This document shows, one piece after another, positions 4,861-34,736 of a DNA stretch of 64,000 nucleotides. The stretch is from Mytilus edulis (Eukaryota). The DNA is taken from the NCBI RefSeq assembly GCF_963676685.1, contig NC_092351.1, positions 88,288,001 to 88,352,000 on the forward strand, given 5' to 3'. Each line of letters begins with the position of its first letter. The stretch's first letter is position 1. Position numbers and translations under genes: made by a program. Under the pieces are notes generated by a model. It made no database searches, was not told the origin of the DNA, and saw nothing but the letters and a program-made list of their open reading frames with translations.

Positions 4861-7109
4861 GTATTCTATTGTGTGGTGACTTAAATGCAAGGACAGGGTC
4901 AGAGCCAGATTTTATAGTTAATGATGTTAATGATACACATGAACCAATGTATGATAATTATAGTTGTGATGTTATTCAAGAAAAAAGATGTAGTTATGAT
5001 ATGAAAGTAGATTCAAGAGGTAAACAACTTCTGGACTTGTGTATTGCGTCCAAATTACGTATTTTAAATGGGAGAATGTGGGGCGATTCTTATGGTAAAT
5101 ACACTTGTATGAAGGCAGTGGGTAGTAGTGTGGTTGACTATGTTATCGTGTCAGAAGACTTGATTGCAGACACTTTATTTTTTCATGTTGCTGATTTTTT
5201 ATCAACTCTGTCAGACTGTCACTGTAAACTAACATTTGACCTGTTAGCTAGTTACTCACCTAAAACTAAGGAGCAAGACATTACTATTTTATTTCCAGGA
5301 AAATATATATGGTCAGAAACCTCTACACAAAAACTTCAAGATACTTTATGCCAGCCAAATATTAGAAACAGCATTAAAAAATATTTGGACTCAAAATTTA
5401 ATCTTTCAGAGGACTACAAATGTGTATTGAAGAAGCGGCTAATGAATGTTTTAATATAATAGATAACGCTGCCAGCAAATGTTTAATATTTCGTAAAACA
5501 AATTTAAAAGGTGTACGTAAACATAAAACAAAAAATGGTTTGACCTAGACCTAGTACAAACACGTAAAAGTCTTATTTCTAAAGGTAAGCTATTATCAAA
5601 ATTCCCTTGGGACCCAGTTATAAAAGAGTCTTACTATAAATGTTATAGAGAGTATAATAAGCTACGTAAATATAAAGAAAGGAAATTTAAACAAAACATT
5701 CTTGACAGTCTGGATAATTTAAGGGATAATAATCCAAAGAGTTATTGGAATCTCATTAAAGAATTAAAAGAAGACACTTCGGATGGTCCAGAAAATTCTA
5801 TTCAAAATAATATCTGGTTTTCATATTTTCAATCTTTAAATGTTAACTCTGACAAATTTAAAGACAGATTAGAGGAAATAAGTAAGAAAGTAAAAAATTT
5901 AGAAAAAAATCCAACGTTTTGTGAACTAGATTACAAAATAACCCTAAAAGAAATTTTGGATGCTATAAATAAACTAAAGAATAATAAAGCTGCAGGATTG
6001 GATGGTATTCCAAATGAGATATTAAAATCAGGGGGAAGTATATTTGCACCTGTTTTGCAGAAACTTTTTAATTTAGTATTCTGCTCTGGAACATACCCTC
6101 GCAAATGGTCATTATCTTATTTATGTCCAATTTTTAAAGCAGGGAGTCCTAGTAAACCTGAAAATTACAGAGGCATAGCAATAAATTCATGCATTGGAAA
6201 ATTATTTAACAGTATTCTTAATAAAAGACTTGACATTCATCTTGATAAAAATATTATAATTCATCCATGTCAGATTGGTTTTTCAAAAAATAGTAGAATA
6301 ACTGATCATATGTTTGTTTTAAAAACCATATTAGACAAATATACTAACAAAAAAGGGGGGGAACTTATGCTTGCTTTGTGGACTTTAAAAAGGCTTTCGA
6401 CAGGGTCATACACTGTGGTATTAAATATAAATTATTGGAAAACAACATATCTGGAAAATTTTATACTATTTTAAAAGATATGTACAGCAAGAATGAAATG
6501 TCTGTGAAAGTGGGCAATGTATTAACACCATCTTTCAGCTCGCTAGTTGGGGTAAGACAAGGGGATGTTCTAAGTCCAAACTTATTTAAGCTTTTCATTA
6601 ACGATCTGCCTCCAAAATTTGAGCCAAGTCCAGATGCTGTTGATATCAATGGGCGTAGTATTGATTGTCTTATGTACGCTGATGACATTATTGTATTATC
6701 AAACACTAAAAAAGGTCTTCAAAACCGACTTGATATATTGCATACTTATTGTATTGACTGGTGTCTAGATGTAAATTTGTCCAAAACAAAAGTTTTAATT
6801 TTTAACAAGCCTGGAAAATTTTTGAAGGAATCATTTTATTTAGATAAAGAGGCTTTAGAATGTGTTAATAAATGTAAATATCTAGGGATAGTCTTTACCT
6901 CTAGTGGTCTTTTTCAACAGGGGAAAGAAGAGCTATTCAAAAAATCCTTAAAGGCAAAATTCAAATTAAAAAAAATCCATGTCAGCTTGTAATCCAAGTA
7001 TTGATACTGCAATTCATTTATATGATCACACAATAAAACCAATTTTATTATATTGTAGTGAAATTTGGGGTTCATTTAAAATTAACTCTGCTGCTTGCAA
7101 GAAAAATAG
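4861..7109 (+). mobile_element. Non-LTR retrotransposon (LINE, RTEX-like) ORF2, 5' segment: APE endonuclease + reverse transcriptase, frameshifted, 5'-truncated
   Basis: APE motifs CGDLNAR, LRILNG, SVVDYVIVS, SDCHC (ORF 4767-5459). RT motifs KAAGLDGI, PENYRGIA, QIGF, DFKKAFD, GVRQGDVLSP, YADD, KYLG (5956-6992). Interrupted at 7109. Confidence 0.9.
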
Positions 7110-7790
7110 TACGGAAGCCGTAAGGGGACACACAAAACATTAGAAAATATTTTTTTTAATTCGAGATCACGATAAAACATTACCGTTTTACCGAGATCTC
7201 GATAAAAAATATATCGTTATCTCGATAAAACGAAATTGTTATATCGAGATCTCGATAAAAAAATATATCGTTATCTCGATAAAACGAAACTGTTATATCG
7301 AGATCTCGGATTATTAAATCGTTATCTCGGTTTAATATATCGAGATCTCGATAAAAAAGTATATCGTTATCTCGAGAAAACGAAACTGTTATATCGAGAT
7401 CTCGGATTATTATATCGTTATCTCGAGAAACCGAAACTTTAATATATCGTTATCTCGAGAAAACGAAAGTTTAATATATCGTTATCTCGAGAAAACGAAA
7501 CTGTTATATCGAGATCTCGGATTATTAAATCGTTATCTCGGTTTAATATATCGAGATCTCGATAAAAAATATATCGCAATCTCGAGAAAACGAAACTGTT
7601 TTATCGAGATCTCGGATTATTATATCGTTATCTCGAGAAAACGAAACTGTTATATCGAGATCTCGGATTGTTATATCGTTATCTCGGATTATTTAATTGC
7701 TTCTTATCACGTGTCAACTTATTACACAATGGTGACAGTCAACACGGCGGAAAGAGTAAGTATGATTTGTGTGTTTTAAAGCTTGTTTTA
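7110..7790 (+). repeat. Left terminal inverted repeat with CpG-rich subrepeats (TATCGAGATCTCG, TATCGTTATCTCG, AAAACGAAAC)
   Basis: First ~350 bp is nearly the exact reverse complement of 34380-34730. Looser homology continues to ~7790. Confidence 0.92.
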
Positions 7791-9719
7791 TACATGATGT
7801 TATGGTGATGTGTCACTATTATAGGTGCATTTAGCTGGGAATATATGATATGCGTAAGAAATCTGTATGGCAATATCTGAATAAATCAATTGAACAAATT
7901 CGTCAATTAGTGAATGTTTACAGTATAAACAAAACATGGTAAAGTTCTCTTAGAAATCATACTGTAAACACTGAAGAACACGATCATTTCCGTCAGGAAG
8001 GTAGAAAAAGGGACAGTACTTCTTGATGGGTTGATAAATCAGCGTCCAAACTTTATAGAGGAGGTACATTTTTATGTTTTGATTGTGTTTGTTCATCCTT
8101 TAGAAGAAATATTGATATCTGTTTAATGTGCCATTGACCGTCATATGAACGATCTAGGCTCATAATCTAAGATTTGCTGTAGCGGCCATGTTTTTAATTG
8201 GACCAAAACAAAGGTAGGATTGTTGGTAACATTCCTGCATAGTTTCGTCAAAATCCGTCAAGTGGTTTCAGAGAAGAAGGTGAAAATGTAAAAGTTTACG
8301 ACGGATGACGGACGCAACGTGATGGTAAAAGCTCACACTGACTTTCAGTTAGGTGAGCTAAAAAGGATTATATTTTCATCCCAATTTTTATCAATTATGT
8401 GTATAGTAATCCTTTGGGTAAACATTTTATCAATTCAATGAGATATGAGGAACTCTTTCTTTTGAATTCTATAGTCGGATAATCGGAAGATCTGCTATAT
8501 GTATGTAGACAAAAAGACAAAAATTACAACAAAGTTCCAAAGTCATAACATTTGTATATACTAGAACACACCCGTGATATCACGGGTCCGTGACTGAATT
8601 AAAGTATATAACTATGCGTAAGCCTTATTTTAGTACTAGTATTGTCATCTGATAAAGTCATGCCGATTATAAGTTTCACAGTTTTCTCTGCTTTCAAAAT
8701 CTTTCTGTTTGAACCCGTCGACCTGGATTTTATCAGTTATTTGTAATATTGGAGTATTTTTTAATAACAGCATTGTCCTATATAGGCGAGTGTAATATTT
8801 GAAAAAGACGTCTAGTTAAGGACTTTAATGCACCCACCTAACACACGGCTAATTTCTTTTTTAAATGAAGGAATAATGATTTAACTTTGATTTTTGCCCG
8901 GTCGTCACAAAATCGTACGGTGCAGTTTTTGTAAAATTGACGTTTATTTCGGAAATTAGTTGAAAATTATAAAACTACGACATGTTTTTCAAGCAAAGGA
9001 AATTAGTCGTATCTCTTCTTTTAGACAGAATAATTAAGTGAATTAGATTCTTAGAATAATGAAAAACATTATTTACAAATGCAAATCCGCATGCTTTTGC
9101 ATTCCTTCTAAATATTTGACATTTTGTACGAAAATTTTCATAATCCTGACCTTTTCGGATCTACAATTAAATTTTTATTAAATAATTTTGCACTCTATCC
9201 GTTTTAGAACACACCAAATTACTCATCAGTTATCGTTTTTTCATTCAAGATCAAGACTTTATCTCAACATTTCTTAAAATCACGAGTTTCTGTAATTTTA
9301 TGATGTTGGGTAAAATCACTATAGTTTCCGGAATCCCTTATCTATTTCGTTATCGTTTTTTTACTGAATATATTAGTCGATTTCCGTGTACTTAATAGTG
9401 CTATTAGAGTACTATAAATCATATTTAAACGGTTCTATTTCTATCTTTAACATCAGTGTAGCTTAAATAGATATGAAATCGTCCGAAATTAAGATCAAAT
9501 TTAAGTAAAACATAATTTTTGAGTTCTGTAGAATTACCCCTTTCTAAAAAAGGAATCGTATCGGAAAATTGTAGAAAATCTTCCGAGTCGTGTCAAACTT
9601 TTCACAGTCCAGTGCACAATGAAACCATTTCTATGCTAAAAAGCAAAAACTATCCATTGATTGACATAGATATGCATAGTCTGTCATGTATTTACCACAT
9701 CGAAACTATGTAGTTAAAC

Positions 9720-10850
9720 ACTTAAATGATTGCCGCTGTGGGAAAACTAAAAGATGAAGTTTACAGAAGACTGGTCGATGAATATGAAAAAAAATTAAAA
9801 CATCCCATTTGAAAATACAAAATATCATAAGATTTGCTATAAATATTTTAAAAGTAAGCACAACCTATCATCTTCTGTTTTGTCCGCTGTACAAAGATTT
9901 TGTGCTTCATGTACCAATTCTGCCGACCAGTCTCTTCACATATATCAACGAGGGCAGTAGATCTATAACTCATTCTGATTTGTCTGTTTGTATATTTTGC
10001 AAATTTATAAAGCCTATAAGCAAGGTACACAACTTTATAAGGTATCCTTTGAGGAGCAAACTCAAGCTGTATTGAGTGTTACTACATATATCTCCTACAA
10101 TGATCTGATTTACAAAATAACTCATGATAATTTTACTATTAAATCTTTATACCATCGAGCTTGCATCGCTAAATATTTGTTACAAAATTTGAAATCAGAA
10201 AGTAAAGAGCTATTTAATTCTGAACATAAAACAGCTTTTACTAACATTTCGACGATTAAAGATGACGTGCCTGTACACAAGGAAGTATTCTGGTTAACAA
10301 CTTTAATTACTTGGTCAGTTAACCGGGCTTAATAAATTTCTGCCCCAGAATAGCCGACGAGAAAACTACAGAACATATTATCAGCTTCAACAAAAACTAA
10401 AAATATATGGTCAATTTATAGTTACATATATACAGCATCAACGAGGCCAAGGTACATCCAATATTGTATACAGTAGCTCTATAATTTTGTCTTATGCCGT
10501 AATGACGGAAAATTACTCGTTTAAAATGACAGTTATATATACAGTCTGTCAAATTCAAAGATCTGAGCAGTGACTGCGAAACTGGTTGCAAGCACTTTAT
10601 ACAGCTACTAGTATTTTACGGAAGCATATATGGGGTAAAGTTGTAATCCAATCAGATGAATATCCATTATCTAAAAACATTTCACTGGATTATTCAATTA
10701 AAATTATGCCACCTGCTTTAAAAACATTTCTGTATTGTCTTTTGGATGATGGCGCATCTGCCGCAGTTAATAAAGCGTACGATATTCCTATTGACAAAGT
10801 TCTTAGATGTATGGCGTTAGTAGAATGTATGTATATCTATAAATATTTTT
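9720..10850 (+). pseudogene. Decayed N-terminal part of an Academ-like transposase
   Basis: Fragments KYHKICYKYF, CIFCK, LYHRACIAKYLL, ATSILRKHI..MPPALKTFL across frames, with stops and frameshifts. YHxxC motifs recalled from Academ proteins. Confidence 0.6.
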
Positions 10851-13141
10851 TTTTACTCTTTTTCATTTAGGTTTATTATTACAAATGCACCGTATTTATG
10901 GACACACCTTTGATAACTATTAACAAGTTTGACTGCTCAAGAGATTAGAAAAATTGAAAATGGGGCATACATTCTACGTGGCATTATTTTTCTTCTGGGG
11001 GTCAACATTTTATCCAAGACAAGTCGACCTAACTACAGAAACAATAAAAGTTCTCCGTATGACTTTGGTTTGGTAAAAGGCAACATCGGTCCGGTATGAT
11101 GTCATCCAAATTGCTACAAGATTTGATCTGTTCACGCATTGGTATAGGTATAGGGGGAGGGTTGAGATCTCCAAAAACATGTTTAACCCCGGCGCAATTT
11201 TACGCCTGTCCCAAATCAGGAGCCTCTGGCCTTTCTTAGTTTTGTGTGATTTTTTATTATTATTTCTTGAGTATATTTCGAAGCTTAGTATGACGTCCAT
11301 TATCATTTCAAACTAGTACATTTTTGTTTATGGGCCAGCTGAAGAACGCCTCCGGGTTTGGGAGTTTCTTGCTGCATTGATGACCCATTGGTGATCTTCG
11401 GCCGTTGCCTGCTTTTTGAACGGGTTGGTGTCTCTTTGACAAATCCCTCATGTCCATTCCCAATTTTTAATTCAATCTGTATATAGTAGATCTTGTGTCC
11501 GCTTTGAGCAAAACCTCTGCTGTACTGATATATGCCCATGCCAAGGAAGTTGTCTTTGTATGGATATGTTGACCGATAAGAATGGTGAGATTACAAGTTA
11601 AAATGAAGCTATAATATTCCGATATCGCAAGATTTCGACACCTAAATGGTCCAACATCCCATTGGTCCGACGTTTCGATCATTTAGGTTATACTCTAACG
11701 GAATTTTAACATAAGAAAGCCAAATAAAAGGTTCAATATTAGGATAACCGTGTCCTCCGTTTGAAACGGTGAAACAATATATAAAAAATTAATACTTAGT
11801 GCCAAAGAAGCCGAACGTCATCACTAGCGTAATTCAAAATAAGTACAAACTACTTTGTCAAGTGTTGTTTGATTAGTTAGATATCTCAAGATACACGGCG
11901 GCCGACTAAAGTAAAATCAAACTTAGTTTGATGTACAATGAGTGATCATATTTTCCTTGTGATGTTTTATATTAAAATTGTCACAATTTTGTTGATATAA
12001 ATATACTAGTAGCACTTTACTCATTTTAGTAATGTTAGTTAGACTACTCTTATCATATCTGATTAAGTGATGTAAATGAAATTGCGATATGATCCAGACT
12101 CAACATATTGCACTACAATAATAAAATAATTCTGCCCTATGGTTGTCTGATCTTGAAGCGGTTGACAGGCTTTCAAATTAACAGGAGACCATACACTTCC
12201 TCAATTTTAATGTACAGCTCATCATGGGACTTTTCTAAACAATTCAAAATACGTCATATGTTATATTTCCCCCTTGCTTCAAATATTTTGTTTCGGATTA
12301 CTTTATATCAAATTTGCAGATATGTGTTTGTAAATACGTGCAATCAAATGATATGGAGGTATTATAAGATTTAGATAATGCAAGGGCGACTACATATACA
12401 TTTGTGTGACTTAATGGTTGATTTTCAAATATTCCGAGAGAAAACGTTACGTAACATGCGTTACCGTTAAAATCAACCAAAATTAATAAGATTTATTCCT
12501 ATGAAGAATAAATCCGGTTATCGGAGGAAAGTGGGCTTACGTTTTGGGAGTTGTCCCGCTTTGAACACGTGGTGGAACTTGTTATGTATTATGAGTCACG
12601 TTAATTATTTTAACCTTGATAACTGTGACGTCATCATTCTTTCTTTACCACGTACGATACAGCAGAGGGAAGACGCAAAAAATTGGGTTCTGTATGAATT
12701 AACTAATGTTTGTTTTATGATGACTCCAGAACTTAGGAATGAAGTTGTTCAGATTGTCAATGGCAATGCCCTTATTCACTCTCCAGCTACTGTTAGTGTT
12801 ACATCTCCTGACTCAGTCAATGAAAGGCAACAATCGAATACAGGTATAACACAAAGTTCTAATATTTGCCAATAACTAGTGCAAATGGTAATCTATGTTT
12901 AAATGTTTCACAAATCTCGGAACAAAATAATTAATGGTGAATATGTAGATTTAGGTATATATTGCTTTAATACAAATTCAGGCACAGAACAGTAGATACA
13001 AATGGACAGCTGATTATCCAAACTAAACTAAGTAAAAAGATTACTGATATTAACACATGGATAGATGCTTTCCTTATTTACATAAGTATTTATGTTGGTG
13101 TACATTTAGAAGATGCACCTAACTTAACCGAATACATACAT

Positions 13142-13400
13142 GTTAAAATATTTTGTGTATCCGTGTTTCTAGTGCAAAATTTACAAAATCTCTCATTAGA
13201 GGGTATTGTTGGTCTTGCATACCTACCAGTTTCTATTGATAATGAGTGGGCACTTATTCTTAATTTAGTGATAAATAAAAAGTTAACCACAGTTTCCATC
13301 TTTTATCTTAAGATAGTTCAAATTTAATTTAATTTTGTAGAAATCTTCTAGTTTCTGTTTGAAATTACTATTACAATGCTTGTTAAAGGGTATTCCAATA
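13142..13400 (-). mobile_element. LINE ORF2 3' fragment
   Basis: KLRISAHSLSIETGRY..ERFCKFC, the same motif class as 35460-35620. Confidence 0.7.
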
Positions 13401-13537
13401 TATTTCATTAATTCAGATAATTTATTAGACCACAAATTTTCTCTGTACTAAGTTGATATTTTAATAGGATTGATTGATTGTTGGTTGCTTAATGTCCAGT
13501 GGCAAATATTTCAGGCATATCTATCAGGACAAATATT

Positions 13538-15890
13538 TACACAGTGTCTGTAAATTGTGTCATTTTAGGATAATTTAGTTTGTATCAAGCAGATACATTG
13601 TTATGACACAGTGTCTGTAAATTATGTCTTTTTAGAATAACTTAGTTTGTATCAAGGAGATATTCTGGTAGAACACAGTGTCTGTAAATTGTGTCTTTTT
13701 AGGATAATCTAGTTTGTATCAATTAGATCCATTGATAGGACAAAGTGTATGTAAATTGTGTCTTTTAAGGATAATATAGTTGTATCAAGTAGATACATTG
13801 ATATGACACAGTGTCTGTAAATTGTGTCTTTTAAGGATACTATAGTTTGTATCAAGTAGATATGTTGATAGGACAGTGTCTGTAAATTGTGTTTTTTAAG
13901 GATAATATAGTTTGTATCAAGTAGATATGTTGATAGGACATAGTGTGTTTAATTGTGTCTTTTAAGGATAATATAGTTTGTATCAAGTAGATATGTTGAT
14001 AGGACACAGTGTCTGTAAATTGTGTCTTTTAAGGATAATATAGTTTGTATCAAGTAGATATGTTGATAGGACAGTGTCTGTAAATTGTGTCTTTTAAGGA
14101 TAATATAGTTTGTATCAAGTAGATATGTTGATAGGACACAGTGTCTGTAAATTGTGTCTTTTTAGGATAATTTAGTTTGTATCAAGTAGATACATTGATA
14201 TTACACAGTGTCTGTAAATTGTGTCTTTTTAGGATAATTTAGTTTGTATCAAGTAGATACATTGATAGGACAGTGTCTGTAAATTGTGTCTTTTAAAAAT
14301 AATTTAGTTTGTAGATATGTTGATAGGACAGTGTCGGTAAATTGTGTTTTTTAAGGATAATTTAGTTTGTATCAAGTAGATACATTGATAAGATACAGTT
14401 TCTGTAAATTGTGTCTTTTTAGGATAATTTAGTTTGTATCAAGTAGATATGTTGATAGGACACAGTGTCTGTAAATTGTGTCTTTTAAGGATAATATAGT
14501 TTGTATCAAGTAGATATGTTGATAGGACACAGTGTCTGTAAATTGTGTCTTTTAAGGATATTTTAGTTTGTATCAAGTAGATACATTGATATGACACAGT
14601 GTCTGTAAATTGTGTCTTTTAAGGATAATTTAGTTTGTATCAAGTAGATATGTTGATAGGATACAGTTTGTGTAAATTGTGTCTTTTAAGGATAATTGAG
14701 TTTGTTTGTATCAAGTAGATATATTGATATGACACAGTGTCTGTAAATTGTGTCTTTTAAGGATATTTTAGTTTGTATCAAGTAGATACATTGATATGAC
14801 ACAGTGTCTGTAAATTGTGTCTTTTAAGGATATTTAGTTTGTATCAAGTAGATACATAGATAGGACACAGTGTCTGTAAATTGTGTCGTTTAAGGATAAT
14901 TTAGTTTGTATCAAGTAGATACATTGATATGACACAGTGTCTGTAAATTGTGTCTGATAAGGATAATTTAGTTTGTATCAAGTAGATACATTGATAGGAC
15001 AAAGTGTCTGTAAATTGTGTCTTTTCAGGATAATTTAGTTTGTATCTAGTAGATACATTGATATGACACAGTGTCTGTAAATTGTGTCGTTTAAGGATAA
15101 TTTAGTTTGTATCAAGTAGATACATTGATATGACACAGTGTCTGTAAATTATGTCTTTTAAGGATAATTTAGTTTGTATCAAGTAGATACATTGTTAGGA
15201 AACAGTGTCTGTAAATTGTGTCTTATGAGGATAATTTAGTTTGTATCAAGTAGATACATTGATAGGACAAAGTGTCTGTAAATTGTGTCTTTTAAGGATA
15301 ATTTAGTTTGTATCAAGTAGATACATTGATAAGACACAGTGTCTGTAAATTGTGTCGTTTAAGGATGATTTAGTTTGTATCAAGTAGATACATTGATATG
15401 ACACAGTGTCTGTAAATTATGTCTTTTAAGGATAATTTAGTTTGTATCAAGTAGATACATTGAAAAGTTTGTATCAAGTAGGATACAAACTGTATCCTAT
15501 CAATGTCTGTAAATTGTGTATTTTAAGGATAATTTAGTTTGTATCAAGTAGATACATTGATAGGACACAGTGTCTGTAAATTGTGTATTTTTAGGATAAT
15601 TTAGTTTGTATCAAGTAGATACATTGATAGGACACAGTGTCTGTAAATTGTGTATTTTAAGGATAATTTAGTTTGTATCAAGTAGATACATTGATAGGAC
15701 ACAGTGTCTGTAAATTGTGTATTTTAAGGATAATTTAGTTTGTATCAAGTAGATACATTGATAGGACACGGTGTCTGTAAATTGTGTATTTTAAGGATAA
15801 TTTAGTTTGTATCAAGTAGATACATTGATAGGACACAGTGTCTGTAAATTGTTCCTTTTTAGTATTTTTGATTTGTATCAAGTAGATACA
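13538..15890. repeat. 67-bp satellite array, about 35 copies
   Basis: Consensus ACACAGTGTCTGTAAATTGTGTCTTTTAAGGATAATTTAGTTTGTATCAAGTAGATACATTGATAGG. Period measured from 15541 to 15608. Confidence 0.95.
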
Positions 15891-18851
15891 TCAGAAACAT
15901 AGTGTACATGTCTAGTGGCTTTCGAAGCGTTCCGTAAATTGTACAATTATGATATCATTTGGCCACCACTTTTAGAATCACTTAAGGCATTTTTATTGCA
16001 TGCAACTATATTTATTGCTTATATGTCACTTGAAACAAATTAAATTGGTTTATAGGACAGCTAACTGTTATCCGTAAAGAAAGATCACGTTGCAAAATTT
16101 TGCTATTATTGTTATCCCATTCTCAAAAACGGATCAATTTTGTCATGGTACATGTATAGAAATAACAGAAACTAAACTAGAATATTGTCTAATTTATTTG
16201 TAAAAAATATGAAATGCACAAAGGTTAAAGTCCCCTAATTCTCTGTCTTTGGTGACAAGTACCAGTGTTCATGTGTTCTAAGTTTTAAAAGTTTGAATAC
16301 ATGTAGGAATAATGGATTCAGTTTCAATTTGAATCGGAGATATGGTAAAAACCAATAAGCATTAATAAAGCAGCCACAAGAATGTACACCTTTGCCGCTT
16401 AGCTATATATACAATTGGGAGGTTGTTACATAAAATAGCCTGAATATATAATAAGCCCGATATATTCACATCTGACGGCGTTACTTTATCTCATGTGGGC
16501 AATTGTTTCTTATTCCATTACAGGGTAATTTAAATATAAATATATGTGTGTGGTCATTTAAAAGTACGGTCACGGCGGTGTGTTGTGTCGCTACCGCATT
16601 TGTGGCGGTGGTCGAACTCAGTGTCCAATAACTCTTGGCATAGCCACTGAATTCGACCATGTGGCGAAAATAGCGACACAACATCTACAAATATATTATG
16701 CTTCTTATAATGGAATTATGTATCCGCTGAGCTTCTGTTTCCCAGGGCCAGCATCCGATATATTTTGGAAGCAATAATGTTAATAAGGATATTATATTGA
16801 TATATAAGGAAATGACATTATAAGGAATAACAATAAGGTGGAAATAAGGAATAAGAATAATGTGGAAATAAGGAATAAGGAATGGACAATAATGTGGAAA
16901 TAAGGAATAAGGAATGGACAATAATGTGGAAATAAGGAATAAGGAATGGACTATAAGGTTTAATTATATATACTAGGGACTTGCCAATTATGTTTCTCGG
17001 CAGTCCCATTCTTTGTCAAGCCGTGGCCGTACAATTTTGTACTTTTGCCAAATAAAATATTTCTTACTTTATATATTTGTATGTCATTTGGCCCCACGTT
17101 GTCTCAGATAATAAGATTTATTCCTATGAAGAATAAATCCGGTTATCGGAGGAAAGTGGGCTTACGTTTTGGGAGTTGTCCCGCTTTGAACACGTGGTGG
17201 AACTTGTTATGTATTATGAGTCACGTTAATTATTTTAACCTTGATAACTGTGACGTCATCATTCTTTCTTTACCACGTACGATACAGCAGAGGGAAGACG
17301 CAAAAAATTGGGTTCTGTATGAATTAACTAATGTTTGTTTCAAAAGTTACCCACCCACCCACCACTTAGATAAAAGACATACTCCTAAAATGTAGTTAAT
17401 ATACATGTGTTAAATGTTATATTATGTTATATCATGTTGTTCGTTTTTCTGCTGTTTTTGTTCTATTTTTCAGGTTGAAATGACTGGTAGCTTATTCCGA
17501 TTGTAATCCCAATCCTTCGTCACGGCTTCAGACAAAGACTCCGACCATTGTAATCCAAATCCTTCGTCACGGCTTCAGACAAAGACTCCGACCATTTAAT
17601 GGCGAAAATAGCGACACAACATCTACAAATATATTATGCTTCTTATAATGGAATTATGTATCCGCTGAGCTTCTGTTTCCCAGGGCCAGCATCCGATATA
17701 TTTTGGAAGCAATAATGTTAATAAGGATATTATATTGATATATAAGGAAATGACATTATAAGGAATAAGAATAAGGTGGAAATAAGGAATAAGAATAATG
17801 TGGAAATAAGGAATAAGGAATGGACAATAATGTGGAAATAAGGAATAAGGAATGGACAATAATGTGGAAATAAGGAATAAGGAATGGACTATAAGGTTTA
17901 ATTATATATACTAGGGACTTGCCAATTATGTTTCTCGGCAGTCCCATTCTTTGTCAAGCCGTGGCCGTACAATTTTGTACTTTTGCCAAATAAAATATTT
18001 CTTACTTTATATATTTGTATGTCATTTGGCCCCACGTTGTCTCAGATAATTAATACTATGATAGAAATATATTTTTCCAACAGTAATACAGCATTCCTGT
18101 AAAATTGTTTCGTTTTTGCATTTGTTTTGACTAGATTTTTCTACTGGAAGTATCCGTGAATTGAAATTGCACCCATGACCTTTGACCTCGATTTAAAAAA
18201 AATGCACCATAATTTCTTTTGACGACCGGGATATTTAGAAAGTACACATTCTTAGCTTTCCAGTGATATACAATTTAGCCGTGTGTTAGGTAGGTGCATT
18301 AAAAATGTAAATTTGGCTCTCATATCACTCGCCTAATATTAGTTATAAATAAAGTTGAATTCTTTGATTCGCTGTTTTAAGTCATGCCGGCTAACAAATC
18401 GAAAACTACCTATACGCCTTATTTTAAGTCCAGATTTTTTGTATTCGTATTGACATCTTAGATAGTCATACTGATTAAAATACTACAATAGGGAACAATA
18501 TGACAATGATTGATTTAGAAGTGTCAACCCTTTGATTATGACCCGTGTATATAGCAAAATCCTAAATACACCGTTTTGTGGTGCGCCTGTAAGATGCGCA
18601 ACGTACAGATAAGGTAATAGGTAACAGGTGAATATATTATTTATATCGATATCGGATTCTACCCGGAACTTGTTAACGGGTCTGGAGTGGTGTAAATTCT
18701 AATCAACACCATTGTTCTAATATTAGCTATATATAAAGTTGAATTCTTTGGTTTGTCATTTTTACCCCATGACGGCTGACAAACTCGACCTCGTTATTTT
18801 AGTATTATAGATATATACAAAAATATTTGATCTTGACAGTTTCTTTTGTAG

Positions 18852-21769
18852 GTAAACGTGCTTCGTTTGGTGAAGAGATATTTTGAAATGGAATTCTTTT
18901 ATAGAGATATTGTCAAGATTTTACAAATGAATCATGCCATTAGTATATCACTTCGTCAGGTTAAGAGGTATTTAAAAGAAATGAATCTTGCTCGTAGAAA
19001 AGACTACTCAAATATTCGATCTGTATTTAACTTTGTTCATACGCAAGTCACTTCATACGGACCAGCGCATGGATATCGTTGGATGTATCAGAAGTGTAAG
19101 CGGCACGGGTTTAAAATAAAAAGAGACCACATTAGCCTCATGCTTAACACAATTGATCCAGAGGGGGTATATCTTAGAGCCCGGCGAAGACTAAAAAGAA
19201 GAGAATATTTTTCAAGGGGGCCAAATTTTTGTTGGCATTTGGACTCCTACGATAAATTGAAAAGATATGGCTTATGCATCAATGCTTGCATCGATGGGTT
19301 TTCCAGGAAAATAATATGGCTCAAAGTTGGTAGATCTAGTAGTAATCCAAAAGTCATAGCTAGGTATTTTATAGACGCAATAAAAGAGCATAGAGGTCAT
19401 CCATATAGCATGAGAGGTGATATGGGCACAGAAAATGGGCTGGTTGCAGTAATGCAGACGTTGTTTGCTGGAGATGAAGTGACAATACCTTTCATTTACG
19501 GAAAAAGCACTATGAACACTAGAATTGAGTCCTGGTGGGGCATTTTGCGAAAGAAGTGCTGTCAAGTATGGATATCAGCGATGAAAGGCCTTCAGGAACG
19601 AGGTCAATTTTCAGGAGACAAACTTGACATTAACCTAATTCAATTTTGTTGCATGCAGTTACTTCAGGTACCTTTCTTTTCTATTTGTAGAAATATTTTA
19701 CCTTCCAATATGAGCTCATGGCAATAGGCTTTCTTTGAAAGATCCTTTTTGATACCAATTTTTGTTGTACGTTTTACTTGTTAAAAACTCTTATTTTGAT
19801 ATAAGGAATGTATTATGTTTTTTAATCAATTCCTCACAAACGGTATTTTAAGGGAAAATATAGATTATTTGATACGTTGCTTGGAGCATAACTACGTAAT
19901 TGGTTTACACTTCAAAATTGTTTTATTTTAGTTATCAGTTAGGTCATTACACGATCCACTGTATCTACTAAATCATTGGAATGTCACTCCGTATTCATCG
20001 TAGTAATCTTCATTTGACTAATTTATTTTAGGATGAAGGATTTGATATCGAGGTGCTTGGGTTTTTTTTTCTATTATCAGTCGTTTAGGTTGTCTGAGCT
20101 GCCTGTCAGCAACAGCGAGTGTTCTCTTGTGAATCTTTTTATTTATGTTTTGTCTTCTTTTTCTGTAAACATGGTAAATTGTCTATGATTTTTCTCGATG
20201 AATTGGATCCTTTTTAATTCTTATTTAGATTGTACGTTTTACTTGTTCAAAATTGTTATTCTCATCTTGGTATATCAGGGACAGGCTGCATTAAATACGT
20301 TTAACCCCGCCTCATATGTTTAAGTGTGCGCCTGTCTTATGCCAGGAACCTTTGTCAGAGTTTGTATTTGAATTAATCTTTTAATTTCTTTCTGGGAGAA
20401 GGTTTCTCATTTGGTTTGCCTTGGTGTTAAGTTGGCATATCCTCATGATGCCCTATGGGACCATACATAGACGGTCGTACATGGTGTACATGCTGCATGG
20501 CGGCCTCCGTATGTCACGCTTTAATTGTTCGATGATTTGGTATCTGATTGGCATTTATTCCATAAATTGTACCTGACTTCTAATGATTGTAACGTATAGG
20601 AGTTTTTGTAATAAGTAATATCCTATTTTAACGTATAAACTCGTAAACGACATACATATCAAATGTGATCTGGAACAGAAAAAAAAATAACATCATAGAA
20701 AAAAGTTACCCACATTAGGATTTCTCGGTAACGCGAAATTGTAGAAGAGGGACGAAAGATACCAAAGGGACAGTCAAACTCATAAATCTAAAACAAACTG
20801 ACAACGCCATGGCTAAAAATGAAAAAGACAAACAAACAACAGCACACACGACACAACATAGAAAACTAAAGAATAAACAACACGAACCCCACCAAAAAAC
20901 TAGGGGTGATCTCAGGTGCTCCGGAAGGGTAAGCAGATCCTACTCCACATGCGGCACCCGTCGTGTTGCTTATGTGATAACAAATCCGTCTAAGGGGGAC
21001 GATCCGAGAATTTTGAAAAGGAAGGGTGCTAGAACAAATGAGGGGTGGTGGTGTGCCAGGCTACTATTTGCCGATTTTGGCCTATATTTCACATGAATTT
21101 AACAAAATTTTCCAAAAAAAATAGGGTGCACATACCCGGAACACCCACTTCCCCCACCTTTTAATCGTGTGCTGTTGAATCTGGACATATTTTGAGAATG
21201 ACACATATACTTTCAGTCGACGTTTCGTCTTAATGTATGTTTGCCAATCAGAACCTAGAGAAGACAATTACGCCAACAAAATTGGATTTTTACAGGGACA
21301 TTTGGAACAAACTGATCAGCCCTACTTCTAACGGTAGTGTACAATTAATGGGGAAGATTTTAATAAGATTGCATTTGAAAATCTTGTGATTTGATTGGCC
21401 TTTTGTCCTGATTAAAAATGAAAAATGGCTTTGTCTTTTTTACAGAGCGAACTAGATGACACTGCGCAGGTATGGAACACTCATTATATTAGGAGAAGTA
21501 GAGAGTATGTTTTTCATGGACGGCCTGTCAACATGTATCTTTATCCCGACTTGTTCAATGCTGAGGAGCATATTCGACAGGTCGATGACGACGTGCTACA
21601 CTTTTGTCGATCAGAATGCGCTGAAGAGGACGAGTACCCATGCGAAGAAGAGATTTTTGAGTTGGGATGCATTTACATGGAGGAAAATCTACTGAAACCA
21701 CCCGAAAACGTCGACGAGTCAGTAGCGCTATACCTAAGTTTGCGTCGCTGGTTTATTCAACAGCTATGA
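18852..21769 (+). CDS. IS3-like DDE integrase-core transposase; exons 18852-19667 and 21446-21769 (probable first mini-exon 7729-7755)
   Basis: HTH-like N-terminus (ISLRQVKRYLKEMNLARR, GYRWM) and catalytic motifs WHLDSYDKL, CIDGFSR, RGDMGTEN, NTRIESWW. Phase-0 GT-AG intron 19668-21445 joins LLQ|SELDDTAQVWNTHYIR. No internal stops. Confidence 0.88.
20744..20988 (+). repeat. Interspersed repeat family B (AAGAGGGACGAAAGATACC...), likely Penelope-like-element derived
   Basis: Reverse copies at 45475-45790, 50600-50942 and 56990-57085; forward copy at 53660-53905. The 50.3-50.9 kb copy is attached to a PLE-like RT fragment. Confidence 0.7.
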
Positions 21770-23450: not shown

Positions 23451-26400
23451 TAAAAAAGAAGATGTGGTATGATTGCCAATGAGACAACTATCCACAAAAG
23501 ACCAAAATGACACAGACATTAACAACTATAGGTCATCGTACGGCCTTCAACAATGAGCAAAGCCCATACCGCATAGTCAGCTATAAGAGGCCCCGATAAG
23601 ACACGGAAGCTTTCAAATATTCCCACGCAACTAAATTAGCAAATAAATCTGTCGTTCGTCATTACTGTGAAGTTTCAAAACATTTAGCCTAACAGTTTCA
23701 GAGGAGAAGATTTTAGAAAATCGGCCAATGAGAATCTAAGATTTGCTATAGCGACCCTGTTTTTCATTGGACCAGAACAAAAATAAGTAAGTTCGTAAAG
23801 AACCTTCAACTGAACATTCCTATAAAGTTTCGTTTAAATCCGTCCAGTGGTTTCAAAGAAGAAGATGAAAATGTGAAAAGATTACGACGGACGACGGATG
23901 CAACTTGATGGTCAGGTGAGCTTAAAATGTAGCATAAGGACATGAAAGATAGACTGTGCCAAGTTCAAAGTAAATCCCTTCAGTGGTTTTTGAGAGAAAA
24001 TTTTCGGAATGTTAACAGCGGGCGACATACGATGGAAAGCAAAAGCACAAATAGTCTTCGGCTAGGTATACTAAGCTAAAAAATAAATATCATGAAATCT
24101 CCTTCAATATCTTTATTTGGTCAACAAAACTGACAAAATAATATAAAGCTGAAAAATGGGGGCCCGTATGCATAACACATCTTAAGGTTATATTTGTTCG
24201 TAAAGGACAGTTTTTTCTTCAAAAGCAATGGACGTCTACTGGTACTCTAAATGGAATTCTTAACTTCAGTATTTTTATGAATACAGGCTCAGGCCATTCT
24301 CAGTAATGCATCATACTCAGTACATTTTATATATTGAACTGAAAAGCAAACTTAATCATGTTTACTTAATAATATTTACATTAAAAAGTTACATTCAGTG
24401 CATATGATATTAAAGTTTTAATAAAGAAAAAAAGCTAAAAACTTTATGATCTTATTTAAATTGGTCTAAATTTGAAAAAAATGAAAACAAAATTTCGACA
24501 GGAATACCTCTGACTCAGAAAAAAAGTGTAATTCACACGGAATAAAAGTGTCAACGAGTTAAAATAATGGTGGAAAGGTTATTTATTGGTTACATGCCTA
24601 AAATTACCCCAGTTGCTGGAAACTACTCTGATACTTTCAGAAAGTACTCCTACAGCTTATTAAAAAAAAGGCAAAAAAGGGACATATCTTCCAAGACGAG
24701 ACATTGGAGCAATGTAATTAATATGCTGACCAATATTTTGATAGCTTTACTGCTTTACAAATACTGAGTCTACCCTCATGATCTATTTCAAGCCATTTGA
24801 ACATTGTTAGTAAACCCTTTAGATTATGTTTACCTAGTTAAGATCAGGACCCTTTTGATTTTTACAGGGTCAAAGATTTTAATATGTTTATGACATATTT
24901 TAATGCCATTTGAACCATGCATGTTTATTTTGTTGAGACAAGTATACACTCTACAGTTATAATCTTCAGTTAAACATATCTAGATTCAGTCAGGCCAGTC
25001 ACTCAAAGGATGCTGCAGTGATCTAGCATTGATGTAAGCATGGTTAAACAATGTGCATTTAGTCCCTGACAAATTTACATTTTGTTGATTCTTCTTTGAA
25101 TCATTACATGAAATCATACAATACAATCTTAAAACAATGTGCATCTAGTCCCTGACAAATTTACATTTTGTCGATTCTTCTTTGAATCATTACATGAAAT
25201 CATACAATACCAACTTATTGAATGTAAGTGATAAAAGCAAAAGAAAGGAATGTCCAAACTTCAATCAAAGAAGTGACTAAACATAATCCATCTCCCACAT
25301 GTTTGTTTTGAATATGTTCATAAAGTCTTCTCTGAGGTCAGCAACAGACTCATAACAAGATGGCAGTTGTGGCATATTCCCACAAGTCTGAGCTGTGGGT
25401 CTCCTCTCAAAACCTGAAAGCATACTAAATGCTACATTTAATTGGTAACACATGAGGTTTGATCCAGTACAAAAACGCATAAAGTTTTGAAGTCCTTTCT
25501 CGTCTAAACTTTTTATAAACTTTTAACGATAACCAGCCACAATCTGTTCTTTGAGTTCAAGAACATCAGGAAACTTTAGAAGTTTCAACACTTTTGCAAC
25601 TGTTGGGTTCTTGTCTTCATAAACTCTTGAACTCTTAGCTGGACTGTTTGTGGAGTTAATGATGAAGTCTTTGAAGGTGATTCATTTGATGGATCAGAAG
25701 ATAAGTTAGCGACTTGTTTATTTACTTGTAGTAATTTGTGATCAGGTAAACTATCATCGGATGGAGATTCCATTTCAGAACAGCCCACAACAGTTGTTGG
25801 TAACTTCTTGCTGTATATGTAAAATCGTAGAAGTTTTGATCCTGTCAAAGTATATAGGTCTCCAATTGTGCAATCATTGTCCATTCTGCCTCCCATAAAA
25901 TTTCTGACTTCAAATTGAAAATCTGTTACGTTTCCTCTTTTCGATTTGCCATTCAGGAAAAATACCTTCTTCCCATGTTGCAGGATATCATCTTGCATCC
26001 AGGTCTTCGGTGCATTGATGTATCTTACGCCTCCACCATTTAGTGTCCTGACTTGACGATATTCACTACTTCTGTAATCGTAATCAAACCACCCAATTTC
26101 AATCTTCCTCTCTTGCTTTTTGGCATTGTCATTCCCTTTCAGCTTTCAATAAAGAATGAAGAACGAATGTACAAAAACAAAGAAATTAAACAACTAAACA
26201 CTCTTTATTCAATGTTTACTTTTTAGCTCATTTTTTTTCAATTGCTAAATATGTGATAAATAGATTATTATTCACTGTAAATTATTCCTGTACATGCACA
26301 CAGTTGCTTACATTACTCAGTTGCTTACCCATGCTACACTACACAAGTATTGGTACTCCAGATCTATATAGTGGAGGAAAGAATAAAGAAGAAGAAGAAT

Positions 26401-27922: not shown

Positions 27923-30640
27923 TATAAAGTACCCCAAATTATAATGTAGTATTGTGTATTGAAATGTGAATATACATGTAATAATGATAATGTACCTTCT
28001 CTTCTCCAATTGTTTGTATTGATTCATCTGATGCATTTCCATTTCTTAAAAATTCAAATACTTCACAGTAGTCATCCATTTCTTTCTGTAAAACAAAGAC
28101 AAATATCAATATGATAATAACATCAAGAGTAATAACAAAATTACCGAACTGATGAGCAAAAATCCAGGGCAGTAGTCAATAAATAAAAACAATAAATTTA
28201 AAAAATCGATAAATAACGCTTATCAGGGGCAATAACTCTTCCATGGAGAAAACACATACCTTTGAATTCAATTAAATAATATTAAATCAGGCCGTTGCGC
28301 AAAAATATGGAAATTCGCCAACAATGGGAGAAAAGATGTTCCCCATTTTGAGAAACAGATAATCGTATGGAAAACTTTACTTTAGTTTTTGGGGTTATGG
28401 CTGATTAAGTTATACTCAACCAGCACTGACTTAAACATGCTTACTTCAGACTTTTTCATATTCACGACGGGTATTCCTGGCACACGGAACCGCAATATCC
28501 ATAGCACAGAGTTCTAGTTCTGTAGGTCAGTAGTGAGAATGTGGATCTAGGGAGTCCTCTGCTTTCAGAGATTGACGGAATCGAGATGGCACATAGATTG
28601 TGGACATGTCACAATGAATGCACACTTACTGTCTGTGTATTAAATCTGGACAGAAAGGACCGTAGGCAAATAAAACTCTGTTGAGTCAGAAAATTTCAGT
28701 GCGTGAAATTTTATTTATTTATTGCACACATCGAAACAAAGCATGTTTTTCCCAAGATACAGGAATTTACGGTTAATCCAGCTATTTTGGAGAAGGGCAG
28801 CACTGTTGCATGGACCATTTGATTTTCAGGGGTGGGGGGATGGGTTGGCTTTTCATGTGGACCCAGATTTTTTTCCCCAGCAAATTTAGGGCCAGGATAA
28901 TTTTATCTAAGAAAACCCAGATGCCTCCCCCCTCCCCCTCAGAAAAATCAAATGGTCTGTACCTTTGAGGCCCACTTTTCTCTTTGAGCATGTTGAGATC
29001 AATTTATTCCACCCTTCCTGGACAAATAATTTCCCCCCTCAAATTTCAGGATATTATAAATAGTCAGGCCCCCTGAAGTAAAAATGGTCGGTCCTTTAGG
29101 GATATTTGAACTTGAATCCGGGTCTGTTTGCTCTAATTCACGTTGCCCTAGGACCTGTTCACTCTACTTCTTGTTTGTCCTATGTCCGTTCACTCTGATG
29201 TTTCATACATGTTTCATATATTTTATTGTTTGTTGGAAATTCCACCAACTTTTTATCTTGTTTTTGCTGTATATTTTCTCATTTAATTTATCTGCAAGTT
29301 ATGTAATCACTGTGATACAATTTTATTGTATTGTCTAAATTGTTTTACATGTATATACGTTTGTGTGCTTTGTGATTTTTTTCCCTTCATAAAGTTGTTT
29401 TACTGTATTGAGACTTTAAATCAAGGTGTGTCATGACTTATCGTGTTCTGTATTTGATCACATTTATACATTTTATACATTAACTCGGAGAGAACAGACA
29501 CCATGTATTTTCTCTTCATAATATATAAATGGTTTTACATTACGAATTTTTGGGCCCCTTTATAGCTGGCTGTTCCATGTGAGCCAAGGCTCTGTGTTGA
29601 AGGCCGTACCTTGACCTATAATGGTTTACTTTTATAAATTGTTATTTGGATGGAGAGTTGTCTCATTGGCATTCACACCACATCTTCCTATATCTACATG
29701 TATCATGTCTATGTATATATGTTACAGTGAATTTGTATAATCAGGCATTATGTAGAATCCCTGATTTTTATGGGAATATGTAGAATCACTGAAATCATTA
29801 GTAATTATATATAATCCCTGAAAATGACCAGTGATTTTACATACTCACTGAACATGTTAATGATTATTATACAAACTCCCTAATATGATTTCAGGGATAA
29901 TCAATAATTTAAGATTCCTTTGTTTAATAATCTTATTTTAATATAATAGACAAATTATAATATTTTTCTTTCATATTCCTTTCCAAATGAGATAAATCTG
30001 CTTTTAAACACAGAGGGTGATCTTAAAGATATAACTTACAGGGTTTTTAGAAAAAGTTGAAGCTGACTTCACAATTACTAAAGTATTTTTAATTGGAAAC
30101 GAACCTAGGGCGAACGAAATCCATGGGCGAACGAATCCACCACAAACTGACCTAGGCCAGGGCGAACATGTAACTAGAGTGAAACGGTCCAGTTACCCTT
30201 TAACTTGAAATGCCGGAGTGAGGAGGGGGGGGATTTGATTTATTTTTCTCAGTAAGAATATGGATTTATAACGTTGGTGAGACAATGCCAGAACATTTAA
30301 TTATTCTTTGAGATGGCATTATTATTCTGTATGAAAGATCTTTGCATACAGCATAATAATGCCACCTCAGAAAAGATCCTCTATCAAATTCGTAGGAAGT
30401 CATCCCAGAAAAAAAATAATTAAAAAAGCCTTGCCAGACGTCATATGCATAGACGTAGAAAGGCGTCCCAGAAAAAAAATTAAAATAGCCTTGCCAGACG
30501 TCATAATTATTTTGACTAGTCTTTTTCCTGAAAAGTCAGGATCGCAATGAGTGTTGTTTGTTTCGGAACTTTAAACAAAAGCCCCCCTGTTTAAGATTTA
30601 AATGGTCGGTCCTTTATAAAACTTAGTATGGCTGATCACT

Positions 30641-33830: not shown

Positions 33831-34039
33831 TCTACATAAGACATGTTTGTTTACTGTAAAAATTGACTAATTGACGAATTTGTGAAATTGCTTCACTCAC
33901 ATATTGCCATACAGATTTCTTACCCGTATCATATGTTCCTATGTGAATGCACCTATAATAGTGAAACATCCTGATCACATCAAATATTGGAAGTAACTTT
34001 CCGGGCTTCTTTATCATGCATATCGAGTGAACAGTCATT

Positions 34040-34730
34040 CAAACAAGCTTTGAAACACACAAATCATACTTACTCCTTCCGCCGGGTTGCCTGCCACCTC
34101 TTGATCCGCCATTTTGTAATCAGTTAACAAGTGATAACTAACAATCCGAGATCTCGATTAAATAATCCGAGATAACGATATAATAATCCGAGATCTCAAT
34201 ATAACAGTTTCGTTTTCTCGAGATAACGATATATTAAAGTTTCGTTTTCTCGAGATAACGATATAATAATCCGAGATCTCAATATAACAGTTTCGTTTTC
34301 TCAAGATAACGATATATTAAAGTTTCGTTTTCTCGAGATAACGATATAATAATCCGAGATCTCGATATAACAGTTTCGTTATTTCGAGATAACGATATAT
34401 TAAAGTTTCGTTTTCTCGAGATAACGATATCATAATCCGAGATCTCGATATAACAGTTTCGTTTTCTCGAGATAACGATATATTTTTTATCGAGATCTCG
34501 ATATATTAAACCGAGATAACGATTTAATAATCCGAGATCTCGATATAACAGTTTCGTTTTATCGAAATAACGATATATTTTTTATCGAGATCTCGATATA
34601 ACAATTTCGTTTTATCGAGATAACGATATATTTTTTATCGAGATCTCGGTAAAACGGTAATGTTTTATCGTGATCTCGAATTAAAAAAAATATTTTCTAA
34701 TGTTTTGTGTGTCCCCTTACGGCTTCCGTA
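34040..34730 (-). repeat. Right terminal inverted repeat
   Basis: Reverse complement of 7110-7790 with a different order and number of inner subrepeats. Confidence 0.92.
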
Positions 34731-34736
34731 AAATAG

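What the first reader, a model, noticed from the sequence alone, without database searches (positions are those of the whole stretch)
7700..7790. Both transposon genes appear to start from homologous mini-exons built into the two inverted repeats
Seen: left end TTATCACGTGTCAACTTATTACACA-ATG-GTGACAGTCAACACGGCGGAAAGA|GTAAGTATGATTTGTGTGTTTTAAAGCTTGTTT (ATG 7729, donor 7756). Right end read on the minus strand: TTATCACTTGTTAACTGATTACAAA-ATG-GCGGATCAAGAGGTGGCAGGCAACCCGGCGGAAGGA|GTAAGTATGATTTGTGTGTTTCAAAGCTTGTTT (ATG 34112, donor 34073). The exons differ by an in-frame 12 nt (27 vs 39 nt), both end in phase 0, and both have phase-0 acceptors downstream (18852 integrase, 28085 HECT gene). Inference: the TIR is a portable promoter + start codon + splice donor cassette firing inward from both ends, co-regulating the two genes and able to exon-trap whatever is captured inside. 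I do not know of this being described.
Basis: partly seen in the sequence, partly recalled or inferred. Interest (0 to 1): 0.9.

Follow-up and report, generated by a model that had tools for sequence, protein, structure and literature searches.

The report
Start-codon mini-exons in transposon inverted repeats
A 27.6-kb mussel DNA transposon of the IS3EU type has a tiny first exon (start codon plus splice donor) at the inner edge of each end repeat: the right one is the annotated start of its HECT-like gene, and the left one most likely starts its transposase, a new twist on transposon ends acting as promoters.

Summary
The window is Mytilus edulis. Positions 7110-34730 are an IS3EU/GingerRoot-type transposon with TACGG..CCGTA termini, a 6-bp target duplication (AAATAG) and ~0.8-kb inverted repeats (TIRs). 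It carries two convergent genes: a DDE integrase-type transposase and a HECT-like protein.

Right mini-exon (34112-34074): RefSeq model XP_071127559.1 maps exactly to 34112-34074 | 28085-27996 | 26142-25588. Five further Mytilus models share this N-terminus.

Left mini-exon (7729-7755): not in any annotated model; RefSeq starts the integrase at an internal Met (18888). Comparison still favours it:
- Exon 2 opens at an AG acceptor with no start codon of its own.
- It encodes helix 1 and a near-invariant Tyr-Phe upstream of that Met.
- A 61%-identical Mytilus family has in-frame mini-exons in both TIRs (33 and 30 nt).
- An oyster RefSeq model splices a 10-codon mini-exon onto the same acceptor.
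- A third family has 25-nt, out-of-frame versions, so the layout evolves.

No RNA reads could be obtained, so promoter activity, co-regulation and exon trapping are untested. MuDR already shows TIR promoters driving two convergent genes. I rate this a new variant of a known kind, of moderate interest.

The parts
7104..7109 (.). Left copy of the 6-bp target-site duplication AAATAG
   Evidence: A neighbouring uninterrupted unit of the flanking tandem repeat serves as an empty-site paralogue.
7110..7925 (+). Left TIR. It has a TACGGAAGCC terminus, CpG-dense subterminal tandem repeats (~7150-7700), and an inner block that holds the mini-exon.
   Evidence: 7110-7262 is 100% complementary to 34578-34730, and 7790-7925 is 84% complementary to 33852-33987.. 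CpG obs/exp 3.3.
7707..7714 (+). E-box-containing motif TCACGTGT, 14 nt upstream of the left ATG
   Evidence: The same octamer lies 10-16 nt upstream of the ATG at both ends of families B and C.
7729..7755 (+). Left mini-exon coding part (MVTVNTAER), phase 0. The GTAAGT donor is at 7756-7761.
   Evidence: It is the only phase-0 ATG..GT candidate with a perfect GTAAGT between the left end and the 18852 acceptor. Its use as an exon is inferred, not shown.
8784..18331 (.). Nested ~9.5-kb insertion inside the putative integrase intron 1, absent from sibling copies
   Evidence: copies C1, C9, C3 and C4a join window 8783 directly to 18332.
18852..19667 (+). Integrase (DDE transposase) main exon. The AG acceptor is at 18850-18851, and the RefSeq start is the internal ATG at 18888.
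   Evidence: Pfam PF24764 E 4e-23. XP_071127558.1 maps to 18888-19667. D131/D190/E226 are invariant. Residues 3-12 form helix 1.
21446..21769 (+). Integrase last exon, including the stop codon
25277..25681 (-). Remnant of the HECT C-lobe, now out of frame after a ~1-kb internal deletion in this copy
   Evidence: Pfam HECT E 0.0012 on 25280-25522. tblastn of P0145 shows residues 259-532 missing in the window, C9, C3 and C4a copies but present in C1.
25585..26142 (-). HECT-like gene exon 3 of the RefSeq model, truncated and ending at a premature stop
27996..28085 (-). HECT-like gene exon 2 (KEMDDY...GEEK), phase-0 acceptor, internal ATG at codon 3
28445..28459 (-). Alternative first coding exon (MKKSE) used by isoform XP_071127560.1
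30127..32666 (.). Nested ~2.5-kb insertion inside intron 1 of the HECT-like gene, absent from sibling copies
34074..34112 (-). Right mini-exon coding part (MADQEVAGNPAEG), phase 0, donor GTAAGT from 34073. It is the first coding exon of XP_071127559.1.
34127..34134 (-). Right counterpart of the E-box motif, mutated in this copy to TCACTTGT. Most sibling copies keep TCACGTGT.
33852..34730 (-). Right TIR
   Evidence: CpG obs/exp 3.2.
34731..34736 (.). Right copy of the target-site duplication AAATAG

Best explanation
Window 7110-34730 is a recently active IS3EU/GingerRoot-type DNA transposon of Mytilus edulis. The canonical element is about 16.5-17.7 kb; this copy is swollen to 27.6 kb by two nested insertions. 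It carries two convergent genes: a DDE integrase-type transposase reading inward from the left, and a HECT-like protein reading inward from the right.

The inner ~100 bp of each ~0.8-kb TIR is a 5' gene module. It holds a conserved TCACGTGT (E-box) motif, an ATG in good context (ATGG) 10-16 nt further on, a short open frame, and a consensus 5' splice site. Transcripts that begin in the TIR are spliced to the first internal exon of each gene in phase 0, so the start codon comes from the repeat.

Shown: the anatomy, its conservation in a second family, and use of the right module in annotated gene models at this very locus.

Inferred: use of the left module for the transposase, and that the promoter lies in the TIR. 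The promoter inference rests on the fact that, within the element, everything upstream of the ATG is TIR, and that the same first exon is annotated at several loci.
For: Classification:
- Eight copies in three families have TACGG..CCGTA termini and perfect 6-bp TSDs. These are the IS3EU criteria in PMC10045372 and PMC12730594.
- The integrase matches PF24764, with an invariant D-D-E.

Right module:
- XP_071127559.1 maps exactly to 34112-34074 | 28085-27996 | 26142-25588 with GT-AG at every junction.
- Six models in two species carry this N-terminus (one with a single substitution), alongside alternative isoforms.

Left module:
- Exon 2 opens directly after TAG/AG with no ATG until codon 13.
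- In 120 homologues the protein starts at exon-2 position 1-3. Tyr10 is present in 103 of 104 and Phe11 in 98 of 105, both upstream of Met13.
- AlphaFold2 puts residues 3-12 in helix 1 of a three-helix N-terminal bundle, pLDDT about 88.
- The mini-exon is the only phase-0 ATG..GTAAGT in the 2.2 kb upstream.
- C. virginica XP_078335196.1 joins a 10-codon exon (MAQGQGMEHD) to the homologous acceptor, and that exon 2 has no Met for about 33 residues.

Conservation:
- Family B (61% identity) has mini-exons of 33 nt (left) and 30 nt (right) after the same TCACGTGT motif, each in frame with its exon 2.
- The four lengths 27, 39, 33 and 30 are all multiples of three although the sequences have diverged.

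The family is young and mobile, with 8 or more copies at 98-100% identity and open frames, so a working transposase is expected.
Against:
- RefSeq integrase models of families A and B begin at the internal Met.
- P0132, a protein from a 1201-nt intron-2-spliced contig, begins at the first GTG after the acceptor. This is what an unspliced upstream TAG would give.
- Representative full-length HECT-like models (P0413, P0414) start at the exon-2 ATG, so the right mini-exon is not always used.
- All four nucleotide differences between the two mini-exons change the amino acid. The peptide itself is therefore unconstrained.
- Family C has 25-nt, phase-1 versions that would end as 9-codon upstream frames.
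- Gene models are not reads. Near-identical copies could share one prediction error.
Confidence: 0.62

Rival explanations
1. Only the right-hand module is a working first exon. The left copy is a passive by-product of the inverted duplication, and the transposase is transcribed from a promoter inside 'intron 1' and translated from Met13 (18888), as RefSeq annotates.
For: RefSeq XP_071127558.1, XP_071156562.1 and XP_071167323.1, and seven family-B XP models (XP_071130649.1, XP_071180460.1 and five others), start at the internal Met. P0132 starts at the first GTG after the acceptor.
Against: - A Met13 start deletes helix 1 and the Tyr-Phe pair kept by 98-99% (Tyr) and 93% (Phe) of homologues.
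- The left frame, ATG and donor are kept in family B despite heavy sequence divergence.
- The oyster model uses an upstream mini-exon on the same acceptor.
- Low transposase expression could explain why annotation lacks the 5' exon.
Confidence: 0.22
2. The TIR exons are leader exons whose ATG acts mainly as a regulatory upstream start (upstream frame or leaky scanning). The real starts are the exon-2 ATGs (18888 and the ATG at codon 3 of the 28085 exon), and being in frame in families A and B is incidental.
For: Family C's 25-nt exons are phase 1 and would terminate after 9 codons, one nucleotide before the integrase ATG. Both exon 2s of family A hold a nearby ATG. The mini-exon peptides are unconstrained.
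Against: All four mini-exons in families A and B keep the frame through indels of 3-12 nt. The conserved residues upstream of Met13 need an upstream start. The oyster exon 2 has no early Met.
Confidence: 0.1
3. The conserved block is purely a DNA-level TIR feature (a transposase or host-factor binding site), and the mini-exon in gene models is an annotation artefact repeated over near-identical copies.
For: The 33 nt after the donor are better conserved between the two ends (97%) than the 'exon' (84%). The TIRs are packed with CpG-rich repeat motifs. No read evidence was available.
Against: A 39-nt first exon 3.5-6 kb upstream is unlikely to be predicted without transcript support. It appears in gene models deposited separately for two species and beside alternative isoforms at the same locus; to my knowledge of NCBI's pipeline, such isoforms are issued only with transcript evidence. 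Frame preservation in four versions is not explained by DNA binding.
Confidence: 0.05

Closest known systems
[quoted passage not shown] 2019, PMC6839031; Kojima and Bao 2023, PMC10045372; PMC12730594)
   Same: 6-bp TSD, TAYGG..CCRTA termini, long TIRs, and an rve-type DDE transposase without an HHCC zinc finger. Fungal IS3EU families also carry a second gene in the opposite orientation to the transposase (an alpha-kinase).
   Different: The second gene here is HECT-like. 'HECT' does not occur in the GingerRoot paper, and none of the IS3EU or GingerRoot papers listed contains it. A start codon plus splice donor inside both TIRs is not described in the papers read.
MuDR (maize Mutator autonomous element)
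   Same: Two genes, each next to one near-identical TIR. The inner part of TIRA corresponds to the mudrA transcript (PMC8224964). From my own knowledge, both genes are transcribed convergently from promoters in the TIRs.
   Different: Unrelated transposase (MULE/MURA) and a 9-bp TSD. From my own knowledge, the MuDR TIRs supply transcript starts and leader sequence, not the start codon and a 5' splice site. No membership is claimed; this is a resemblance in how it works.
Bacterial IS3-family and other IS elements with promoters or start signals in the inverted repeats
   Same: Expression signals for the transposase overlap the terminal repeat (my own knowledge).
   Different: Prokaryotic, with no splicing, one end only, and no second gene started from the other repeat.

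Membership tests
IS3EU/GingerRoot | 6-bp target-site duplication | tested here: met
   Perfect 6-bp TSDs in 8 of 8 copies of three families. The criterion is from PMC10045372.
IS3EU/GingerRoot | Termini TA..TA, specifically TAYGG..CCRTA | tested here: met
   TACGGAAGCC...GGCTTCCGTA in all copies. The criterion is from PMC12730594.
IS3EU/GingerRoot | DDE transposase of the integrase/IS3 type lacking an N-terminal HHCC zinc finger | tested here: met
   PF24764 integrase core, E 4e-23. D131, D190 and E226 are invariant in 48 sequences. The N-terminus is a three-helix bundle, not a zinc finger.
IS3EU/GingerRoot | Phylogenetic placement of the transposase inside the IS3EU/GingerRoot clade | not testable with these tools
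HECT E3 ubiquitin ligases (second gene) | HECT domain above the Pfam threshold | tested here: met
   The intact copy L031:4493-6526 scores 27.7 bits against a cut-off of 23.9, covering only profile positions 150-292. The window copy scores 19 bits, below the cut-off, because of its deletion.
HECT E3 ubiquitin ligases (second gene) | Catalytic cysteine in the C-lobe and a complete N-lobe | tested here: inconclusive
   A Cys in '...AQTCGN...' sits where HECT has its catalytic Cys, by eye only. The N-lobe is not matched by Pfam. No structure was made.
MuDR/MULE | MURA-type transposase and 9-bp TSD | tested here: not met
   The transposase is rve-type and the TSD is 6 bp. The resemblance is functional only.

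The most novel reading that the evidence does not exclude
In a clade of bivalve IS3EU elements, each TIR is a self-contained, portable 5' gene cassette: promoter, start codon and 5' splice site. The start codons of both element genes have migrated out of the gene bodies into the repeats. Family C would be the intermediate, with its own ATG plus a TIR upstream frame, and families A, B and the oyster family the end state. If so, every deletion derivative or cargo-carrying copy still fires inward from both ends and can translate whatever phase-0 exon it captures, which would make this a natural two-ended exon trap.
Probability: 0.25. Interest if true: 0.75.

Novelty: new variant of a known kind. 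Interest (0 to 1): 0.55.

Why it matters
If both modules work, the repeats needed for transposition also hold the only start codons of both element genes. Expression and mobility signals are then physically fused. Any copy that keeps its ends keeps two inward-firing translation starts.

That would explain how these elements tolerate multi-kilobase nested insertions in their first introns. It predicts chimeric proteins from cargo-carrying derivatives. It also warns annotators that the integrase models in Mytilus are probably N-terminally truncated.

The work also documents a conserved integrase plus HECT-like gene pair in animal IS3EU elements, which the papers I could search do not mention.

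Tried and rejected
The odd pair of two right-type ends at C8:65474446/65491283 was therefore not resolved.
- A metagenome scan with the oyster protein returned only 35-47% relatives that carry their own ATG. It could not show whether the oyster mini-exon lies in a TIR.
- Maverick/Polinton was considered because of the 6-bp TSD, long TIRs and integrase. I rejected it: there is no polymerase or capsid-size frame, the termini are TACGG rather than AG..TC (from my own knowledge), and the integrase family is PF24764.
- Ginger1 and Ginger2 were rejected on TSD length, 4-5 bp.
- The second conserved TIR block was read as a possible internal coding exon and rejected, because both versions have an in-frame stop in phase 0.
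- Invariance of the mini-exons among copies was rejected as evidence, because the copies are 96-100% identical anyway.
- Exons were handled one by one by reference.

Full report
**1. The observation**

- Left: ATG at 7729, 27 nt of open frame, GTAAGT at 7756.
- Right, minus strand: ATG at 34112, 39 nt of open frame, GTAAGT from 34073.

The two regions align at 81% with a single 12-nt in-frame indel. The 33 nt following the donor are 97% identical, better conserved than the exon itself. The specific motif occurs only twice in the window and never in shuffles. A generic 'ATG, short frame, GTRAGT' turns up about as often as chance predicts, so the argument rests on position and conservation.

**2. 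What the element is**

Protein hits name the genome as Mytilus edulis. Inverted-repeat analysis and the end sequences put the boundaries at 7110 and 34730.
- The termini are TACGGAAGCC...GGCTTCCGTA, flanked by the duplication AAATAG.
- The TIRs are ~0.8 kb. The outermost 153 bp are 100% identical between ends. Next come CpG-dense tandem repeats, then an inner block that contains the mini-exon about 620 bp from the tip.
- The genome holds about ten copies. Four that I fetched are 15.6-17.7 kb long.
- Compared with those copies, the window copy carries nested insertions at 8784-18331 and 30127-32666. Both lie in the proposed first introns.
- Eight copies from three families all show TACGG..CCGTA ends and perfect 6-bp duplications. 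These are the published hallmarks of IS3EU/GingerRoot (PMC10045372; PMC12730594).

**3. The two genes**

Plus strand:
- 18852-19667 encodes an integrase core (PF24764, E 4e-23) with invariant D131, D190 and E226.
- A last exon lies at 21446-21769.

Minus strand:
- Exons at 28085-27996 and 26142-25588 belong to a protein whose intact form is a 678-aa frame in the C1 copy. RefSeq models of the intact form are 761 and 716 aa. The intact form has a HECT domain above the Pfam threshold.
- The window copy, like copies C9, C3 and C4a, has lost about 1 kb of this gene and now yields a 228-aa product.
- Families B (61% integrase identity) and C (51%) have the same convergent integrase and HECT-like layout.

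**4. Right mini-exon**

The exhaustive protein search with the 186-aa exon returned P0143, which begins MADQEVAGNPAEG-KEMDDY.
- P0143 is RefSeq XP_071127559.1, isoform X1.
- Every segment maps without a mismatch to 34112-34074, 28085-27996 and 26142-25588, with canonical GT-AG borders.
- The companion integrase model XP_071127558.1 matches window-specific residues, so these models describe this very locus.
- The same N-terminus is in three more M. edulis models and in M. galloprovincialis XP_076091435.1. VDI73641.1 has it with one residue changed (MAYQ...).
- Other isoforms use an alternative first exon at 28459-28445 (MKKSE) or start at the exon-2 ATG.

Within the element, everything upstream of this ATG is TIR, and the same first exon is annotated at several chromosomal sites. 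I therefore infer that the promoter lies in the TIR.

**5. Left mini-exon**

No database protein begins MVTVNTAER. RefSeq starts the integrase at Met13 of exon 2. P0132 comes from a 1201-nt contig that is spliced at intron 2. It begins at the first GTG after the acceptor, as expected if the upstream TAG is retained.

Against that stand several observations:
- Exon 2 opens immediately after a good acceptor and has no ATG for 12 codons.
- In an alignment of 120 homologues the protein normally begins at exon-2 position 1-3. Tyr10 (103 of 104) and Phe11 (98 of 105) are the most conserved N-terminal residues, and both precede Met13.
- AlphaFold2 places residues 3-12 in the first helix of a three-helix bundle.
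- The family is young, with intact frames, so a complete transposase is expected.
- The TIR mini-exon is the only phase-0 ATG..GTAAGT in the 2.2 kb of canonical sequence upstream.
- Crassostrea virginica XP_078335196.1, 60% identical, joins a 10-codon exon to the homologous acceptor. Its exon 2 has no Met for about 33 residues.

**6. Other families**

Family B:
- Mini-exons of 33 nt (left) and 30 nt (right), each after TCACGTGT and each followed by GTGAG.
- Each is in frame with its exon 2: KVFRLVENYF for the integrase and LDMDDN for the HECT-like gene.
- One short copy has a nonsense change in the left mini-exon.
- The lengths 27, 39, 33 and 30 are all multiples of three despite extensive divergence. 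This argues that the frame is under selection.

Family C:
- Keeps the motif, the ATGG and a donor at both ends. The exons are 25 nt, phase 1, and would stop after nine codons.
- Its integrase has its own ATG one nucleotide further on.
- Its HECT-like exon opens after an acceptor without an ATG, and I could not resolve how it starts.

The closest other family (P0004) also has its own ATG at exon-2 position 1. A plausible history is a TIR leader exon whose ATG took over as the start codon in some lineages. This is inference.

**7. Comparison with what is known**

The element meets the structural criteria of IS3EU/GingerRoot. Phylogenetic placement could not be tested.
- Fungal IS3EU elements also carry a second, opposite-strand gene.
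- 'HECT' does not occur in the GingerRoot paper or in the IS3EU and GingerRoot papers listed.
- No paper was found describing a TIR-borne first coding exon.
- Functionally the nearest precedent is MuDR. Part of TIRA corresponds to the mudrA transcript (PMC8224964). From my own knowledge, both of its genes are transcribed inward from TIR promoters.

The new element here is that the start codon and 5' splice site of both genes lie in the repeats.

**8. Limits**

- Promoter activity, co-regulation by the shared motif, and exon trapping remain untested.

**9. Verdict**

- Observation: confirmed.
- Interpretation: partly supported. The right half holds at the level of gene models at this locus. The left half is likely, at about 0.6-0.7. 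The cassette and exon-trap ideas remain open.
- Classification: a new variant of a known kind, of moderate interest.

Noticed in passing
window 7110-7760 and 34070-34730: The TIRs are extremely CpG-dense (obs/exp 3.2-3.3 at only 32% G+C) against 0.67 in the element interior. The cause is repeated TCGAGATCTCG- and ATCGTTATCTCG-type units. They could be transposase binding sites, methylation targets or a CpG-island-like promoter.
   Followed up: partly
window 25585-25712; L031:4493-6529: The HECT-like gene of this copy and of copies C9, C3 and C4a shares a ~1-kb internal deletion. Only the C1-type copy keeps a 678-aa frame. Most copies with an intact integrase therefore carry a broken second gene.
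   Followed up: yes
window 7790-7925 and 33852-33987: A second block conserved between the two TIRs (84%) has an acceptor-like TTATAG followed 30 nt later by GTAAGA. It also has an ATG-ATA-YGS|GTAAGA that is again phase 0 at both ends. It may be an alternative leader or first exon.
   Followed up: no
window 34127-34134: This copy's right E-box motif is mutated (CACGTG to CACTTG), as it is in one C4 copy. Most other copies keep CACGTG.
   Followed up: partly
window 6990-7109 and 34731-35000: The element sits in a tandem repeat of ~120-bp units. The next unit to the right reproduces the left flank and reads AAAAAG where the duplication AAATAG lies, so it acts as a built-in empty site.
   Followed up: partly
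L045:5399-6080 and L054 (family C, C13:33459399-33484814): Family C has 25-nt TIR exons at both ends (MVDSTKKK / MANSTKKK). In phase 1 they would terminate right after splicing, giving matched 9-codon upstream frames on both genes.
   Followed up: partly
L039:5975-6010 (family B copy on C5): The 9.4-kb deletion derivative has a GAA-to-TAA nonsense change inside the left mini-exon. The 18-kb copy on C6 keeps the frame open.
   Followed up: no
G000:C8:65474446 (+) and 65491283 (-); L011, L012: Two right-type mini-exon ends face each other 16.8 kb apart with no integrase hit between them. This is either an element with two right ends or two truncated elements.
   Followed up: no
L055-L058 (metagenome contigs): Distant relatives (43-44% identity) that have their own ATG still show clustered TCACGTGA/CACGTG motifs 250-1100 bp upstream of the integrase frame. 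The E-box may be an old feature of these elements.
   Followed up: no
window 23446-23603 and 58454-58611; 38775-39028 and 58299-58552: Long, near-perfect inverted matches link the element interior and downstream regions to another repeat family around 58.3-58.6 kb. Sibling copies have about 0.8 kb extra at the 23603/23604 junction.
   Followed up: no
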